Shown: positions 7,175 to 42,717, counted from the stretch's first letter. The stretch is DNA of 64,000 nucleotides from Isurus oxyrinchus (GCA_026770705.1 JANJGN010001343.1:62001-126000), one strand, 5' to 3'. Translations and numbers: made by a program. Notes: generated by a model from the letters alone, not told the origin.

Positions 7175-7214
7175 ATGATCGGGAAATCTTACTTCCTCCT
7201 GTCACTTCTCCAAG
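7175..7214 (+). CDS. Leader exon of Siglec-like gene A (MIGKSYFLLSLLQ)
   Basis: Acceptor at 7133-7134, ATG at 7175, phase-1 donor at 7215. Joins V1 to give ...LLQ-VGLS-QEW. Confidence 0.78.
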
Positions 7215-10200
7215 GTAATAACATCGTCAGCTTGGACAGATTTATGGTGAATAGTCTTTGTAAAAGAACATTCTTATTGAGCTCTGATAGGGAACTGATT
7301 CAGCAGTGAGCCAGTGTACAAACTCACACCAAGTCCCATTCACCCATCACCCCTGTGCTCACTGATATACACTGACTCCCTGTCTGACAGCAGAACTGCA
7401 GGACAGCAGAGACCTCAAAGGGTTTCAGGGCTGGAGGAGGTGACAGTGACAGGGAGTGGAGAGGGCGGATGGAGGGATAAGGAATCAATGAAGAGATTTT
7501 GAAAATTGAGTCATTGTTGGACTGGGAGCCAGTGGAGGACAGCGAGTGACAGGGGAGCGATGGGCTGAATAGAGAATCAGGGATAAAAACTGGGGGGTGA
7601 AGTCTATCCTGATGCAAGCACTCCGATGTCAATGCCCTGAAATGTTTCTCTCTTGCTGATTTTCATCAGAATTTCCCATGAAGACAACACAGAAGCTCTT
7701 AGATTAGACAGGCAGTTCAGCGTCACACTTCCTGTCCCTTCTCACCTTGCTAGAAAATTCGATAAGATAGCAAGATAACTGATAGAGAGAAGGGAGGCAA
7801 AGCTGTCTGTATGTAAAACTGTCAAATATTCTGAGTTATCATGATTGTTTCTGATCTGCTGCAGAGTTTATATTTCATTGAAACTTATCACTTTGCAGTT
7901 CAGAGAGAGACCATTGACTCACTGCCTGAAAGGGCGGTGGAAGCAGATTCAACAGGAACTTTCAGAAGGAGAACTGGATAAATACTTGAAGGGGACATTT
8001 TGCAGGGCTGTGGGGGAGAGAGCAGAGGTGAGAGTGGGACGAATTGGACAGATCTTTCAAAGGCCCAGCACAGGCTCGATGGGCCAAATGGCTTCCTTCA
8101 GTTCTGGATCATTCTACAATCCGATAAATTAAATCTCTTATCAGTAACTCTTCAGGCTCCCGCTGCAGGAATGGATCTTTGAGAAGGACAGGGAACAAGC
8201 GGTTTCTCATATCATGTTCATATTTATTGACAGTTACATAAGTGCATGGAACTGTTGAATATTTGACTCTCTAAAGTGTGGATTTAACCTTCTGGTCCAC
8301 CCAGATCTTGTGCTGGTTACCTTGCCTGGAGGTGTCTTTAACTGCTCACAGTGATCTGTGGGATTGTCACCCTTGGATGTTGTTCCTGATTTCATGTGGG
8401 ATCTTCTCCTCGATGGAATAGGAGCGGGAATGGATCTGATTTATCCTCGGTTCCACCTCACCGCTGTGCCCTTGTGTGTTTGACTCCATAGGCCCTTGGT
8501 TCTGAACAAATCCTTGTCACCTCGACTGGTGATCATGAAACTTCTGTGGGATCCTGGATGTGAACTTGTCCCAACTGTAAACTTGGCAACTCTGCACCTC
8601 CATTTTTATCATGAACATTCCTTATCTTCTCTTGTAGTTTTAAAAGTTGCCCTCTGGTTTCTGAGAGAGTAGAATGGGTAAGAGTAGCGAAATTGGTCAC
8701 TACTGGCCCACCAAACATGCTCTCTGTCAGTGATGGAATAAGGTGAGGTGATGGTGTAGTGGTATTGTTGCTAGATGAGTAATTCAGACACCCAGGGTAA
8801 TGTCCTGAGAATATGGGTTCAAATCCGACCATAATAGATGATGGAATTTGAATTTAATAAAAAGATGAAATTCAAAGTCTAGTGATGACCACAAAACCAT
8901 TGTTGGAAATCCCACCTGGTTCACCAGTGCCATTTAGGGAACAAAATTGTCTGGCGGACATGTGACTCCAGACTCCACGTCAATGTGGTTGACTCTTACA
9001 TTAGGGATGGGTAATAAATCCTGGCCTGACCAGTGACTCCCACATCCCATGAATGAATTTAACAAAGTTGCAGTTGTAGGTGTTGATCTCAGATGTAACA
9101 TTGCAATGTGTGGATCTTGCTTGGTCTGTCTACATTTGAGAATTAGGGATTTCACTGTGTGAATCATTCATTCAGCTAGGCTGTTAGATCTGGGGTAATG
9201 AGGAGAAGAAGTAGTGTGATTGATATTCCAGATTATCTGTAATCATGAACCTAGGTTCACCAAATAAACTGAAAATAGTGCTTAGAGTGTGTGCACCAGT
9301 TGTGCTCGGTGTGTTGTGCTATTTTTGAATAATGGGATATCTGGTAAAGCTGTCGACGATGACGATGAAGTCAGTGACATGGACATGAAAGGATTCAGAT
9401 GTGATTTTGGACTAAGAATAGGCAGGAATTTCCTGTGGAATCAATGTTTCTTTGTGTTGATTTGGCTCATCCTCTTGACAAGCCTCGTACTTCCCTACAA
9501 CAACTTCAAGGTCATTGTTCATACCCGGCCAGGGACTGTATCTCTTGTGAGTCTCCTTGTGTGATCTGTGCCCATGTGTGAGGGATGAAGTTGTTGAAGA
9601 ATATAGGATCACAAATGTGCCGGTATGATGCCCTGCCTGCCATTAAAAATGACTCCCTGGGAGATGCCTCGCTTATCTCGATGAGGTCAAGTTGAATCAG
9701 GCCACCCTTTCAATGATATTTCCACAGTTCCTGCAGAATTTTTCACTGTTCCCTCTTGTAGCTGCTGGCATTTCTGTTGTGCTAAATGTACTGGATCAAT
9801 TGACAGACTTGCATTCTCCTGCAGGTGTAATGTAGCAGCTCCCTTGAAACTGACAATACTGTTGAAACTTTCTGCATATTTCAATGTTATGTCCATGAAC
9901 TGAGTTGATGGGGTAGTTTCTGCATTTGACCCATGTGAAGTCTGACAGATTCCATGCATTGTCACTAGTGTGAGGTCACCGCATGCCGGTAGACTTGCAA
10001 TTGCTCAGCCTTTAGTCTCCACGATGTAGAACATCTGTGACACCCAGGAGGATTGATTGTATTTGCACCCCAGGACTATGGATTCTGCACATGGAGTTGA
10101 AGTGTTGTACACAGCAGTAGGTTTCCCCATGGCCTCCCATGTCCTTGGATACATGTCTTTGAAAATTTGCTGGGGTGGGCTGTGGGAGGGGAATGTTGGC

Positions 10201-42500: not shown

Positions 42501-42717
42501 GAACACAACCAGAGACACAACTAGTGAGGGGGAGACCCCAGCTCCCCGGGATCTCTCTGAAGGTCCAGTGGGAGGCGATGTTGGACATGGGAACCCCGAC
42601 AATACCGACGACCTTCTCTACACCAACATCAACTTTTCAAAGCTGCCCAGCGGTGACAGGACTGTGCACAGGAGCGAGGACACGGAATACACACAGATCA
42701 GGTTCCAGAAAAACTGA
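21472..42717 (+). CDS. Siglec-like gene B, inhibitory-type (leader-V2-V3-[gap]-TM-juxtamembrane-one of three ITIM/ITSM last exons); about 404 aa if no exon is hidden in the N gap
   Basis: Phases are compatible throughout (1-1-1-2-0) and the tail resembles CD33-related Siglec tails. C2 exons are not visible and may lie in the Ns at 31386-32569. Confidence 0.62.
22560..24890 (-). mobile_element. Paralogous copy of the Gypsy remnant with the gag 5' part retained
   Basis: gag-like ORF 23857-24072 (MSTKFPSLNWDVADRLSEFRMFKQRTELWF...). Homologous to 9800-11490, with pol largely deleted. Confidence 0.78.
26792..27169 (+). CDS. Siglec V-set exon V2 (essential Arg replaced by Met)
   Basis: 378 nt, phase 1-1, GSCVQIPC...GDCSL...DAGPYFFMIK (ATG at 27106-27108); 3 aa longer than V1 in the C-C' region. 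Confidence 0.92.
27430..28400 (+). mobile_element. L2-type LINE reverse transcriptase fragment
   Basis: RPISSLSFPSKVLER...QSG..HCAETALIKVTN...LLDLSAAFDTLDHTILL...LQLNIGKTEAI. Confidence 0.9.
28440..29325. repeat. ~36-bp C-rich minisatellite (cctcctccagtccctacaaccctccctatctctgtaa)
   Basis: Degenerate tandem array contiguous with the L2 fragment. Confidence 0.8.
29395..30170 (-). mobile_element. CR1 LINE 3' fragment
   Basis: FPLVGESRTR...RRNFLSQRGASLWNSLPQRAVEA; QRDLGVLVHESQKVS. Confidence 0.88.
30287..30655 (+). CDS. Siglec V-set exon V3 (essential Arg present)
   Basis: 369 nt, phase 1-1, AEPSQEW...GSCVQIPC...GGLWF...GDCSL...DAGPYFFRIEF (AGA at 30592-30594). Confidence 0.92.
31386..32569. 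other. N gaps or masked sequence flanked by (CA)n microsatellite
   Basis: Runs of n. Other N runs at 40341-40492, 47733-47861, 49040-49330 and 51450-51704 also lie in or near simple-repeat regions. Confidence 0.95.
32810..33700 (-). mobile_element. CR1 LINE 3' fragment
   Basis: LQLYRGLGRPHLELCVQYWPPYL...GDLIERFKILRGLDRVD; QRDLGVLVHESQKVS. Confidence 0.88.
34362..34458 (+). CDS. TM exon of gene B, (G)RDSSKWTVGLFTAGIMLSVFLAGIFIFICVRK, phase 1-2
   Basis: Acceptor tgtttttacag, donor AA|GTAAGT, uncharged helix followed by basic stop-transfer residues. Confidence 0.85.
34850..35295 (-). mobile_element. CR1-family LINE 3' fragment (duplicate at 37800-38245)
   Basis: CTIYKMHCSNSARLLQQHLPNPRPLPSRRTRAA...SFTVAGSKSWNSLP. 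Confidence 0.85.
35432..35513 (+). CDS. Juxtamembrane cytoplasmic exon JM1, RKTAMEERVSGTSDIALTPSPLSVKHQ, phase 2-0
   Basis: Acceptor ttattgcag and donor CAG|GTACAG; 82 nt bridges TM and tail in frame. Confidence 0.8.
36550..36835 (-). repeat. 33-bp satellite, reverse orientation (also 39490-39770 and 42190-42280)
   Basis: agggtcagtactgagggagtgctgcactgtc units precede each tail exon. Confidence 0.88.
36978..37226 (+). CDS. Terminal tail exon T1 (degenerate ITIM LLYANP; ITSM TEYAQI)
   Basis: Acceptor tttccatttctctgtag, 249 nt, GKQNVLITEP...DELLYANPQ...EQTEYAQIRFEHN*, AATAAA at 37760. Confidence 0.85.
   Translation, partial: GKQNVLITEPRNTTRDTTSEGETPAPRGLSEGPVGGDAGHGIPDNPDELLYANPQAFRVRSGDGSVHREEQTEYAQIRFEHN
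38384..38464 (+). pseudogene. Duplicated juxtamembrane exon JM2 with 1-nt deletion
   Basis: 81 nt versus 82 nt (ttgactcccagt > ttgaccccagt); reads ...IALTPVHSL* to a TGA. Splice sites are intact. Confidence 0.75.
39909..40157 (+). CDS. Terminal tail exon T2 (LLYANP; TEYAQI)
   Basis: Same acceptor, 249 nt, ends ...ETEYAQIRFKRN*, AATAAA at 40801. Confidence 0.8.
   Translation, partial: GKQNVLITEPRNTTRDTTSEGETPAPRGLSEVPVGGDAGHGIPDNPNDLLYANPQVFRVPSGDGTVHREEETEYAQIRFKRN
41840..42190 (+). mobile_element. CR1-family LINE fragment
   Basis: MEYSPLAWMSAAPTTLKKLDT...KAAPL; similar to 44280-44600. Confidence 0.8.
42469..42717 (+). CDS. Terminal tail exon T3 (canonical ITIM LLYTNI; ITSM TEYTQI)
   Basis: Same acceptor, 249 nt, DDLLYTNINFSK...EDTEYTQIRFQKN*. 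Layout matches the ITIM + ITSM-like tail of CD33-related Siglecs. Confidence 0.85.
   Translation, partial: GKQNVLITEPQNTTRDTTSEGETPAPRDLSEGPVGGDVGHGNPDNTDDLLYTNINFSKLPSGDRTVHRSEDTEYTQIRFQKN

What the first reader, a model, noticed from the sequence alone, without database searches (positions are those of the whole stretch)
7175..42717. Paired activating and inhibitory Siglec-like receptors side by side in a probable cartilaginous fish
Seen: two adjacent genes share near-identical 5'UTR, leader and V-set frameworks but have opposite signalling ends. Gene A ends in an Arg-containing TM with a 12-aa Tyr-free tail. Gene B ends in a neutral TM with an ITIM/ITSM tail. Known: this is the design of mammalian paired receptors such as Siglec-5/14 and Siglec-11/16, which are kept similar by gene conversion. 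Inferred: an independent or ancient paired-Siglec expansion in chondrichthyans; the taxon is judged only from the repeat landscape.
Basis: partly seen in the sequence, partly recalled or inferred. Interest (0 to 1): 0.85.

Follow-up and report, generated by a model that had tools for sequence, protein, structure and literature searches.

The report
Shark Siglec genes: on-type beside off-type
This shark DNA carries two neighbouring immune-receptor genes of the sialic-acid-sensing Siglec family, one with an activating-type membrane anchor and one with an inhibitory-type tail. Their sensing domains are only about 75% alike, so they are neighbours in a large gene family rather than a matched pair.

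Summary
The described features are real. Gene A has a leader at 7175, one V-set exon, one C2 exon and a last exon encoding a membrane span with an arginine and the 12-residue tyrosine-free tail ERQTVKGSRQTV.

Gene B has a leader at 21472 and two V-set exons; the first has Met in place of the sialic-acid arginine. It continues with a neutral membrane-span exon, a short cytoplasmic exon and three duplicated last exons. Only the third (ending at 42717) has a canonical ITIM plus ITSM.

Sequence and fold place the ectodomain in the Siglec family. The closest proteins are shark Siglec/CD33-like predictions. Assembled transcript contigs from three runs show the joints V to C2 and C2 to Arg-anchor exon, but probably from 97-99% identical sister copies.

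Three caveats apply:
- The V domains are only 73-76% identical, and the V exon has diverged faster than its introns, so gene conversion is not keeping them alike.
- Gene B's C2 exon(s) lie in unread N runs, so its continuity is unproven.
- Ligand and adaptor are inferred.

Automatic annotation already predicts both gene types in sharks. This scan reported the same design on many other pieces of this genome. I found no paper describing it.

The parts
5028..5067 (+). Spare copy of the leader exon (MIGKSYFLLSLLQ + G|gt), from a local 2.1-kb duplication upstream of gene A
   Evidence: 4440-5662 matches 6578-7817 at 88%; the ATG and GT donor are intact.
7175..7214 (+). Gene A leader exon, coding part: ATG, 13 codons plus 1 nt, phase-1 donor
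   Evidence: G + TT of the V1 exon gives Val, as in shark homologues that begin MIGKSYFLLSLLQVGLSQEW.
13401..13769 (+). Gene A V-set exon V1 (Va type); Siglec cysteine pattern; FFFFRIEF keeps the sialic-acid Arg
   Evidence: (V-set 1.5e-10, Ig_CD22 28.5 bits against cut-off 27). A GT..AG joint 13769|15493 is seen in three runs.
15493..15789 (+). Gene A C2-set exon (C2-1), with the extra Cys (CTFNTTC) typical of Siglec domain 2
   Evidence: C2-set_2 3.2e-8; 94-95% to great white proteins. Joint 15789|17387.
16008..16267 (+). Relic of a second C2 exon. Only 16116-16267 is in frame. The 5' half is degenerate, with about 20 nt deleted, a frameshift and a stop at 16113. Transcripts skip it.
   Evidence: In one search, loose ends before 16114 read the intact ...ESFPASNLTW of sister copies, and the joint C2-1 to membrane-span exon bypasses it.
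17387..17526 (+). Gene A last coding exon: stalk, membrane span with Arg (ILGIRAV), 12-residue tail ERQTVKGSRQTV, stop
   Evidence: It is 96% identical to the C-termini of great white P0161/P0164. The same end occurs in six shark proteins.
21472..21511 (+). Gene B leader exon (MIGKSYFLLSLLH); an out-of-frame ATG lies 22 nt upstream at 21450
   Evidence: P0012 residues 1-20 match 21450-21509.
26792..27169 (+). Gene B first V-set exon V2 (Va type); PYFFMIKF has Met in place of the sialic-acid Arg
30287..30655 (+). Gene B second V-set exon V3 (Vb type); PYFFRIEF keeps the Arg. It is 97.5% identical to the Vb domain of great white P0161, which is an activating-type protein.
31386..32569 (.). Three N runs with two short CA-rich islands. 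This is the expected place of gene B's C2 exon(s). Not read and not filled.
34362..34458 (+). Gene B membrane-span exon, uncharged (RDSSKWTVGLFTAGIMLSVFLAGIFIFICVR); phase 1 in, phase 2 out
   Evidence: 97% identical to great white P0157.
35432..35513 (+). Gene B juxtamembrane cytoplasmic exon (K RKTAMEERVSGTSDIALTPSPLSVKHQ)
   Evidence: collinear with P0153, P0162 and P0203.
36978..37226 (+). Last exon copy 1: LLYANP (YxN, no ITIM) and TEYAQI (ITSM), then stop
38384..38464 (+). Second copy of the juxtamembrane exon, with a 1-nt deletion (81 nt against 82) that brings a stop into frame
39909..40157 (+). Last exon copy 2: LLYANP and TEYAQI; 86% identical to the tail of great white P0153
42469..42717 (+). 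Last exon copy 3: LLYTNI (ITIM) and TEYTQI (ITSM), then stop; 82% identical to the tails of P0003 and P0203
58495..58534 (+). Leader exon of a third gene (gene C) in the next copy of the roughly 54-kb unit; its V exon lies beyond the window
   Evidence: 6578-12675 matches 57900-64000 at 97%.

Best explanation
The window is a piece of a tandemly duplicated cluster of Siglec-family receptor genes in a shark.

Gene A (7175-17526) encodes leader, one V-set domain, one C2 domain and a membrane span with an arginine and a 12-residue tail. By analogy with Siglec-14/-15/-16 and other activating immunoreceptors, the buried Arg should pair with an acidic residue of an ITAM-bearing adaptor and switch cells on. 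This step is inferred.

Gene B (21472-42717) encodes leader, two V-set domains (the first without the sialic-acid arginine), C2 exon(s) hidden in N runs, an uncharged membrane span, a 27-residue juxtamembrane exon and one of three duplicated last exons. With the third last exon it carries ITIM plus ITSM, spaced as in CD33-type Siglecs. After tyrosine phosphorylation it should recruit SHP-1/2-type phosphatases and switch cells off. This step is also inferred.

The two genes are neighbours in a modular family in which similar ectodomain exons are combined with different signalling ends. They are not a matched pair: their binding domains have diverged quickly, probably under diversifying selection. 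Gene A looks like a two-V gene that lost its second V exon and stopped using its second C2 exon.
For: Anatomy.
- Exons, splice sites and phases are as listed under parts.

Siglec membership.
- By sequence, the top 18 PDB matches are all Siglecs, and the F-strand YFFR aligns with YFFRVE of Siglec-5.
- Pfam V-set and Ig_CD22 pass their cut-offs.
- An AlphaFold model of great white P0170 (pLDDT 87) has only Siglecs in its first 30 hits, CD33 at 9e-20.
- Inhibitory homologue P0203 aligns end to end with elephant CD33-like P0275. Both tyrosine motifs are in register, E = 3e-15.

Both end types are real gene products elsewhere.
- Great white P0161, P0164 and P0170 end ...LTVQ|DSGGEILHVI.ILGIRAVIF...GSRQTV.
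- P0157, P0153, P0162 and P0203 carry the neutral span and the tyrosine tails.

Transcripts.
- GT..AG joints 13769|15493 and 15789|17387 occur in contigs of three runs from three studies.

Selection.
- Gene A's four used exons are intact while its unused C2-2 exon has decayed.

Divergence.
- The V exon is 87.5% identical against 94.0% for its flanks, p = 2e-5. dN/dS is 0.65-1.39.

Vb loss in gene A.
- Collinear flanks: 13309-14034 matches the V2 flank, and 14887-15341 matches the V3 3' flank.
Against: - The transcript contigs carry the same roughly 8 differences in V1 and 3 in C2-1 in all four runs. They probably come from 97-99% identical sister copies or another individual, so transcription of gene A itself is not shown.
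- Gene B's C2 exon(s) and the link between its 5' and 3' halves lie in N runs.
- Which of the three last exons is used is unknown. Two of them lack a canonical ITIM.
- Sialic-acid binding, phosphatase recruitment and adaptor pairing are untested.
- One survey (PMC4016189) placed the origin of the FcR gamma chain at bony fish, so the adaptor in sharks is an open point.
Confidence: 0.72

Rival explanations
1. A strict paired receptor. Genes A and B would see the same ligand through near-identical domains kept alike by gene conversion, as in Siglec-5/14 or Siglec-11/16.
For: - The genes are adjacent and share leaders and framework strands.
- At family level, near-identical Vb and C2-1 domains do sit on both end types. 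The window's V3 (inhibitory gene) is 97.5% identical to the Vb of great white activating P0161. Gene A's C2-1 is 94-95% identical to that of inhibitory P0157 and P0153.
Against: - Within the window the V domains are 73-76% identical. The differences are concentrated between the B strand and the IAFHSK motif and in the last strand.
- Gene A has one V domain and gene B two.
- The V exon is significantly less alike than the flanking introns, the opposite of homogenisation.
Confidence: 0.15
2. Gene A is a decaying, unexpressed copy. It has lost its Vb exon and its C2-2 exon, and the spliced contigs come only from intact sister genes.
For: - All four runs show the same differences from gene A in V1 and C2-1.
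- The C2-2 exon is broken.
- dN/dS between V1 and V2 is about 1.4 and not significantly above 1.
Against: - Leader, V1, C2-1 and the last exon (about 850 nt) have no stop or frameshift and keep all splice sites. All Siglec cysteines and the Arg are also kept.
- The V-C2-anchor form without C2-2 is the annotated product in great white shark (P0170, P0161, P0164).
- At 17417, run X1 agrees with the window.
Confidence: 0.2
3. Gene B is not one gene. Either the scaffold joins a V2/V3 block to an unrelated 3' block across the N runs, or V2 is an unused exon and the three last exons are remnants of separate genes.
For: - N runs lie at 31386-32569 and 40341-40492.
- Homology to gene A stops 153 nt before the first N run.
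- The family is highly repetitive in this genome.
- The second juxtamembrane exon copy is broken.
Against: - Order, strand and splice phases all fit.
- The architecture Va-Vb-(C2)-neutral span-juxtamembrane exon-tail is annotated in great white (P0157), basking shark (P0003, P0158) and Mustelus (P0005).
- The Va-to-Vb junction ...VS-A-EPSQEW predicted here is found in P0156, P0005 and P0006.
Confidence: 0.18
4. The family has the Siglec fold but does not bind sialic acid; it recognises proteins or other ligands.
For: - V2 has lost the essential Arg. Some homologues have Lys there (P0162).
- The V domain evolves quickly.
- By my own alignment by eye to Siglec-7, not a tool result, the position of the G-strand Trp that contacts sialic acid is His in V1 and V3.
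Against: - Arg is nearly invariant (90% or more of 34 aligned sequences, R105 of P0170) and is kept in V1 and V3.
- Sequence and fold are closest to sialic-acid-binding Siglecs.
Confidence: 0.2

Closest known systems
Human Siglec-5 / Siglec-14 (and Siglec-11 / Siglec-16) paired receptors
   Same: - Adjacent Siglec genes.
- One has an ITIM plus ITIM-like/ITSM tail.
- The other has a basic residue in the membrane span and a short tail.
   Different: - The mammalian pairs have over 99% identical first two domains, kept so by gene conversion (established knowledge; PMC4042635, PMC13358205).
- Here the V domains are 73-76% identical, the number of V domains differs, and the V exon diverges faster than its introns.
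- DAP12 association is not testable here.
CD33 (Siglec-3) and CD33-related Siglecs of tetrapods
   Same: - V-set plus C2-set ectodomain with the Siglec cysteine pattern and F-strand Arg.
- Best fold match.
- Collinear alignment that includes ITIM (LxYxxI/V..F) and a C-terminal TEYxxI motif.
- Exon plan of leader, V, C2, membrane span and two cytoplasmic exons.
   Different: - The shark proteins form their own elasmobranch clade. Its relation to the tetrapod CD33-related clade is unresolved.
- Synteny was not examined.
- Identity is only about 25-30%.
Human/ape Siglec-12 (Siglec-XII)
   Same: - Two tandem V-set domains.
- In humans the sialic-acid Arg of the first V-set is mutated (established knowledge), as in V2 here.
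- NCBI names many of the shark homologues 'Siglec-12'.
   Different: - No orthology is implied.
- Tandem V exons are common and variable in number in the shark family: 2-4, and seven reported by another note of this scan.
Predicted shark proteins, e.g. Carcharodon carcharias XP_041037177.1 (P0153, CD33-like) and P0170/P0161/P0164 (Arg-anchor forms)
   Same: - 91-97% identical exon by exon.
- Same C2-1 to anchor joint.
- Same tails.
   Different: - They are automatic gene predictions in other species, unnamed in any paper that I found.
Other paired Ig-type immunoreceptor families (KIR, LILR, PILR; teleost NITR and LITR)
   Same: Multigene clusters that mix ITIM-tailed members with members that have a charged membrane span and a short tail (established knowledge).
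   Different: They have different Ig domain families and no Siglec-type V-set.

Membership tests
Siglec family (I-type lectins) | N-terminal V-set Ig domain closest to Siglec V-sets | tested here: met
   - the top 18 PDB sequence matches are all Siglecs, from 1.4e-14 to 7.6e-9.
- V-set and Ig_CD22 pass their cut-offs for V1, V2 and V3.
- by fold, the first 30 hits are all Siglecs.
Siglec family (I-type lectins) | Siglec cysteine pattern: an intrasheet B-E disulfide, an extra Cys for a link to domain 2, and no F-strand Cys | tested here: met
   - GSCVQIPC...DGDCSLI...YFFR is present in all three V exons.
- CTFNTTC is present in C2-1.
- C24, C29 and C87 are nearly invariant in 34 sequences.
- The disulfides themselves are inferred.
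Siglec family (I-type lectins) | Conserved F-strand arginine needed for sialic-acid binding | tested here: met
   - Met in V1 (FFFFRIEF) and V3 (PYFFRIEF), aligned to YFFRVE of Siglec-5.
- Not met in V2 (PYFFMIKF).
Siglec family (I-type lectins) | Sialic-acid-dependent ligand binding | not testable with these tools
   Needs recombinant protein and glycan arrays.
CD33-related Siglec subfamily | Groups with CD33-related Siglecs rather than with MAG, CD22, Siglec-1 or Siglec-15 in a V-domain tree | tested here: inconclusive
   - the elasmobranch clade (support 90) is separate from shark CD22-like proteins and from the tetrapod clade that holds elephant CD33-like (support 98).
- The deeper node is a polytomy.
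- No verified MAG, Siglec-1 or Siglec-15 sequences were in hand.
CD33-related Siglec subfamily | Cytoplasmic membrane-proximal ITIM plus membrane-distal ITIM-like/ITSM motif | tested here: met
   - Last exon 3 has LLYTNI, then TEYTQI 22 residues later and 6 residues from the end.
- It aligns in register with elephant CD33-like.
- Last exons 1 and 2 keep only the distal motif.
CD33-related Siglec subfamily | Conserved synteny with the tetrapod CD33-related cluster | not tested
   The window holds only Siglec-like genes and repeats.
Paired activating/inhibitory receptors in the strict sense | Closely linked genes | tested here: met
   The last exon of gene A (17526) lies 3.9 kb before the leader of gene B (21472), on the same strand.
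Paired activating/inhibitory receptors in the strict sense | Highly similar ligand-binding domains, usually above 90% | tested here: not met
   V1-V2 is 73%, V1-V3 74% and V2-V3 76% aa identical, and the V-domain number differs.
Paired activating/inhibitory receptors in the strict sense | Homogenisation of the binding-domain exons by gene conversion | tested here: not met
   The V exon is 87.5% identical against 94.0% for its flanks, odds ratio 2.2, p = 2e-5.
Paired activating/inhibitory receptors in the strict sense | Opposite signalling: ITIM tail against a charged membrane span with a short tail | tested here: met
   Met at motif level only.
Paired activating/inhibitory receptors in the strict sense | Association of the charged form with an ITAM adaptor (DAP12 or FcR gamma) and of the ITIM form with SHP-1/2 | not testable with these tools
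- PMC4016189 dates the gamma chain to bony fish, so the partner is open.

The most novel reading that the evidence does not exclude
The CD33-type Siglec design predates the split of cartilaginous and bony vertebrates and was later lost in teleosts. That design is V-C2 ectodomain, ITIM plus TEYxxI tail, and Arg-anchored activating counterparts. In sharks it has expanded into a very large modular family. In that family an activating gene and an inhibitory gene are duplicated together as a roughly 54-kb unit. The V exons are driven apart by diversifying selection while the signalling exons stay conserved.
Probability: 0.3. Interest if true: 0.7.

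Novelty: new member of a known kind. Interest (0 to 1): 0.5.

Why it matters
Reviews treat CD33-related Siglecs and their activating/inhibitory pairs as essentially mammalian. One study states that fish genomes lack inhibitory CD33-related Siglecs (PMC7226832, for teleosts). A large shark family with a CD33-like ectodomain and tail layout, plus Arg-anchored partners, would have two consequences:
- It would move the origin of this on/off sialic-acid sensing design to early jawed vertebrates, or else show that it arose twice.
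- It gives a natural system for asking what drives fast evolution of the binding domain.

The practical value is limited. Automatic annotation already predicts these proteins in more than twenty elasmobranch species, and this window is one of many such loci in this genome.

Tried and rejected
- A simple two-gene reading was dropped after the six-frame scan showed three V exons, three last exons and a third type of membrane-span exon.
- I first read the donor of the neutral membrane-span exon as AAG|gt (phase 0). That put a stop in the next exon. Re-reading gave AA|gtaagt (phase 2), which fits the homologues.
- A leader search that required a strongly hydrophobic core missed the true leader. 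It was found by reading 7100-7400.
- Gap test: alignment of gene A's intron and exons to the sequence before and after the N runs gave only CA-rich low-complexity matches. The content of the gap cannot be inferred, and I did not try to fill it.
- BLASTP of last exon 3 alone against elephant CD33-like gave nothing because the query is too short. The full-length homologue did align.
- The V-domain tree of 149 rows and 124 columns, built with FastTree, did not resolve the deep nodes.
- Literature searches for shark or elasmobranch Siglecs found only one passing mention. PMC3015071 is not held.
Exons were searched by reference, and natural homologues were used for full-length comparisons.
- No complex prediction was run, because no adaptor sequence was available.

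Full report
**Layout of the window**

The window has seven N runs. Its large-scale duplications, from the self-comparison, are:
- 1-12675 matches 53980-64000 at 92-97%, so a unit of about 54 kb repeats.
- 6578-14034 matches 20879-27434 at about 90%.
- 34818-37409 matches 37771-40340 at 91%.
- 39645-40177 matches 42191-42737 at 84%.

Six-frame reading and tblastn with shark homologues place every coding piece on the + strand:
- Leader exons at 5028 (a spare copy), 7175, 21472 and 58495.
- V-set exons at 13401, 26792 and 30287.
- One C2 exon at 15493 and half of a second at 16116.
- An Arg-bearing membrane-span exon at 17387.
- A neutral membrane-span exon at 34362.
- A juxtamembrane exon at 35432, with a broken copy at 38384.
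- Three last exons at 36978, 39909 and 42469.
- A third kind of 3' end at 53185, 54240 and 55582. Its last two exons also lie at 260 and 2250.

**Gene A (7175-17526)**

- The leader ATGATCGGG... encodes MIGKSYFLLSLLQ and ends G|gtaat in phase 1.
- V1 (13401-13769) and C2-1 (15493-15789) have AG/GT sites in phase 1-1.
- The last exon begins after ctctag at 17387 and reads (H/D)SGGEILHVILILGIRAVIFLVAVVITIAGVCVWERQTVKGSRQTV*. This confirms the Arg in the membrane span and the 12-residue tyrosine-free tail.
- The second C2 exon is a relic. Only 16116-16267 is in frame. A stop precedes it, and the 5' half is shifted and degenerate.
- Compared with homologues (…CSVESFPASNLTWRHLNVTM…), about 20 nt are missing.

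**Transcript evidence for gene A**

I laid Logan contigs of four runs, from two coded organisms and four studies, on 13300-17700.
- Three runs (X1, X4, X7) give the GT..AG joints 13769|15493 (V to C2-1) and 15789|17387 (C2-1 straight to the Arg-anchor exon).
- The fourth run (X5) has a contig in which an intact second C2 exon, 95% alike, is joined to the anchor exon.
- In X1 and X4 the sequence before 16114 reads the intact ESFPASNLTW. This is exactly the stretch deleted in gene A.
- Transcripts of the V-C2-Arg-anchor type therefore exist, and the relic exon is bypassed.
- Caveat: all four runs share the same differences from the window, about 8 in V1 and 3 in C2-1. The C2-1 changes turn VLNWDIPTD into the family consensus VLTWDTPTD.
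- These contigs therefore most likely come from 97-99% identical sister copies or other individuals. Expression of gene A itself is not shown.
- The contrast between four intact used exons and one decayed unused exon still argues that gene A is, or recently was, under selection.

**Gene B (21472-42717)**

- The leader differs from gene A's at 2 of 40 nt, giving Q to H.
- Two V exons follow, 3.1 kb apart. A LINE-like fragment and a 37-nt repeat array lie between them.
- V2 reads PYFFMIKF, with Met at the arginine position. V3 reads PYFFRIEF.
- Splicing V2 to V3 predicts ...QLQVS-A-EPSQEW. The same junction is present in annotated proteins of basking shark, Mustelus and Scyliorhinus.
- The neutral membrane-span exon is 34362-34458, with donor AA|gtaagt in phase 2.
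- It joins 35432-35513 (K-RKTAMEERVSGTSDIALTPSPLSVKHQ, phase 0), which joins a last exon beginning GKQNVLITEP.
- Last exons 1 and 2 read ...LLYANPQ(A/V)FRV...TEYAQIRF. That is a YxN motif and no ITIM, because Pro sits at +3, plus an ITSM.
- Last exon 3 reads ...LLYTNINFSKL...TEYTQIRFQKN, which is ITIM plus ITSM.
- The second copy of the juxtamembrane exon has lost one base (ACTCCCAG to ACCCCAG) and runs into a stop. Last exon 2 could therefore only be used by skipping from 35513.

**The gaps**

- No exon abuts an N run, and no reading frame has to cross one.
- Gene B's intron matches gene A's V-to-C2 intron at 95% up to 31232. Then come 153 unrelated bases and the N runs at 31386-32569.
- The islands inside the gap and the sequence just after it are CA-rich low complexity.
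- The C2 exon(s) that every full-length homologue has would be expected in this interval. They cannot be read, and I did not try to fill them.
- The phases allow V3 to splice either to a C2 exon or directly to the membrane-span exon. The direct splice is the form of basking shark isoform P0003 (...QLHVSGRDSSKW...).
- The link between the 5' and 3' halves of gene B therefore rests on scaffold order, strand, phase and the homologues' architecture.

**What family this is**

- Each V exon hits Pfam V-set and Ig_CD22 above cut-off. C2-1 hits C2-set_2.
- phmmer of V3 against all PDB chains returns Siglec-5, -8, -7, MAG, CD33, Siglec-10, sialoadhesin and Siglec-15 as the first 18 distinct sequences. 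Only partial matches to other V-sets follow.
- The Siglec cysteine pattern and the F-strand Arg are present.
- A search of 1.84 billion representatives found 256 proteins at E of 1e-10 or better.
- Of the 120 closest hits in a second search, the 118 that carry a source name are all elasmobranch proteins. NCBI has named them Siglec-5/7/8/10/11/12/13/14, CD33-like or MAG-like.
- Exon by exon, the best matches are great white shark proteins:

| Exon | Identity | Protein |
|---|---|---|
| V3 | 97.5% | P0161 |
| C2-1 | 95% | P0157 |
| Arg-anchor exon | 96% | P0161/P0164 |
| Neutral membrane span | 97% | P0157 |
| Last exon 2 | 86% | P0162 (P0153 85.6%) |

- Last exon 3 is 82% identical to great white P0203 and to basking shark P0003.
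- The source is therefore a shark close to lamniforms. No protein matched at the level expected for the same gene in the same species.
- An AlphaFold model of great white P0170 (V-C2-Arg anchor; pLDDT 87, pTM 0.71) finds only Siglec structures in its first 30 PDB hits. CD33 comes first, and Siglec-10 has the best TM-score at 0.80.
- Inhibitory homologue P0203 aligns collinearly with elephant CD33-like P0275 from the V domain to the last residue. Both tyrosine motifs are in register, E = 3e-15.

**Is it a matched pair?**

Not in the strict sense.
- V1-V2, V1-V3 and V2-V3 are 73, 74 and 76% identical in protein, with dN/dS of 1.39, 0.65 and 0.91.
- In the 3-kb alignment of gene A against gene B, the V exon is 87.5% identical and its non-coding flanks 94.0% (Fisher p = 2e-5).
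- The binding-domain exon is thus diverging faster than neutral sequence, not being homogenised.
- In the tree, V1 and V2 belong to a 'first V' type. V3 belongs to a tight 'second V' group shared by activating and inhibitory proteins of great white and basking shark.
- Gene A's flanks are collinear with gene B's. The V2 flank runs up to 14034, and the V3 3' flank starts at 14887. This suggests gene A lost the second V exon.
- At family level the exchange of near-identical ectodomain exons between signalling ends is real. Inside this window, A and B are simply neighbours with opposite ends.
- The repeat of 1-12675 at 53980-64000 suggests that the whole block (A, B and the third 3' end) is itself a duplication unit. 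Only the first 10 kb of the next unit is visible.

**Relation to known Siglec subfamilies**

- The elasmobranch proteins form one clade (support 90).
- That clade is separate from shark CD22-like proteins (P0051, P0056). It is also separate from a tetrapod clade (support 98) containing elephant CD33-like/Siglec-5/12, turtle and frog proteins.
- The node joining these clades is unresolved.

**Mechanism: what is shown and what is inferred**

- Shown: the domain architecture, the motifs, the fold family, the existence of spliced Arg-anchor transcripts in sharks, and conservation of both ends in other species.
- Inferred from established knowledge of Siglecs and paired receptors: sialic-acid binding through the F-strand Arg, phosphatase recruitment by ITIM/ITSM, Grb2-type binding by YxN, and pairing of the membrane Arg with an acidic residue of an ITAM adaptor.
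- The adaptor is an open point. One survey dated the FcR gamma chain to bony fish (PMC4016189).

**Novelty**

- A study of fish Siglecs states that fish genomes lack CD33-related inhibitory Siglecs (PMC7226832).
- A recent review treats paired Siglecs as a mammalian theme (PMC13358205).
- My searches found no paper on shark Siglec pairs. The whale shark genome paper only lists Siglecs among Ig families.
- Against this, automatic annotation already predicts both forms in many sharks and rays.
- Notes of this scan report the same design on many other pieces of this same genome; about 390 notes mention Siglec.
- I therefore class this as a new member of a known kind, of moderate interest.

**Limits**

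- Exons were never joined into a spliced protein for a tool.
- The N runs were left as they are.

Noticed in passing
53185-53283, 54240-54332, 55582-55698; also 260-352 and 2250-2366: A third kind of 3' end. It has a neutral membrane-span exon (GRDSNEWKAGLLGAGICLSVGLSGFFIFKCVRK) and two cytoplasmic exons ending ...DLYANCEFAKDSVYGNL*, with two YxN motifs and no ITIM. It is 93-97% identical to great white and basking shark proteins (P0016, P0154, P0167). No V exon is visible between 42.7 and 53.2 kb, where three N runs lie, so it is unclear which ectodomain exons feed it.
   Followed up: partly
1-12675 and 53980-64000: A segmental duplication at 92-97% identity with a spacing of about 54 kb. The block holding gene A, gene B and the third 3' end appears to repeat as a unit. 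Gene C's leader is at 58495, and its V exon lies beyond the window.
   Followed up: partly
21450 and 5006: An out-of-frame ATG lies 22 nt upstream of the leader ATG in gene B and in the spare leader copy. It is absent from genes A and C. NCBI's great white models P0012 and P0203 start at this ATG (MKYLGVDNDREILLPPVTSP). It could lower translation of the normal frame.
   Followed up: no
13401-13769 against 26792-27169: The V exon is significantly less conserved between the two genes than the surrounding intron (87.5% against 94.0%, p = 2e-5). Replacements cluster between the B strand and IAFHSK and in the last strand. This is a signature of diversifying selection or of patchy exchange with other copies.
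   Followed up: partly
6183-6354, 18870-20653, 36548-36834, 39498-39762, 49512-50396: Arrays of one 33-nt satellite (…CTGACAGTGCAGCACTCCCTCAGTACTGACCCT…). Two inverted arrays lie about 150 nt upstream of last exons 1 and 2. A shorter stretch of the same repeat, read only from the six-frame translations, lies before last exon 3 at 42.0-42.3 kb.
   Followed up: no
1098-2151 and 55078-55483: A 24-nt tandem array of 44 and 17 copies, in the intron before the last exon of the third 3' end. The copy number differs between the two duplication units.
   Followed up: no
8394-10445 and 59714-61765; 27390-28086; 17697-18152 (-): Retroelement pieces. One is a roughly 2-kb insert in the leader-to-V intron of genes A and C that gene B lacks. 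The others are reverse-transcriptase-like fragments, one between V2 and V3 and one after gene A.
   Followed up: no
51861-51923: An isolated fragment (YQCVAENERGAVEGFITISVE) of a second-C2-type exon, just after the N run 51450-51704 and 1.3 kb before the third membrane-span exon.
   Followed up: no
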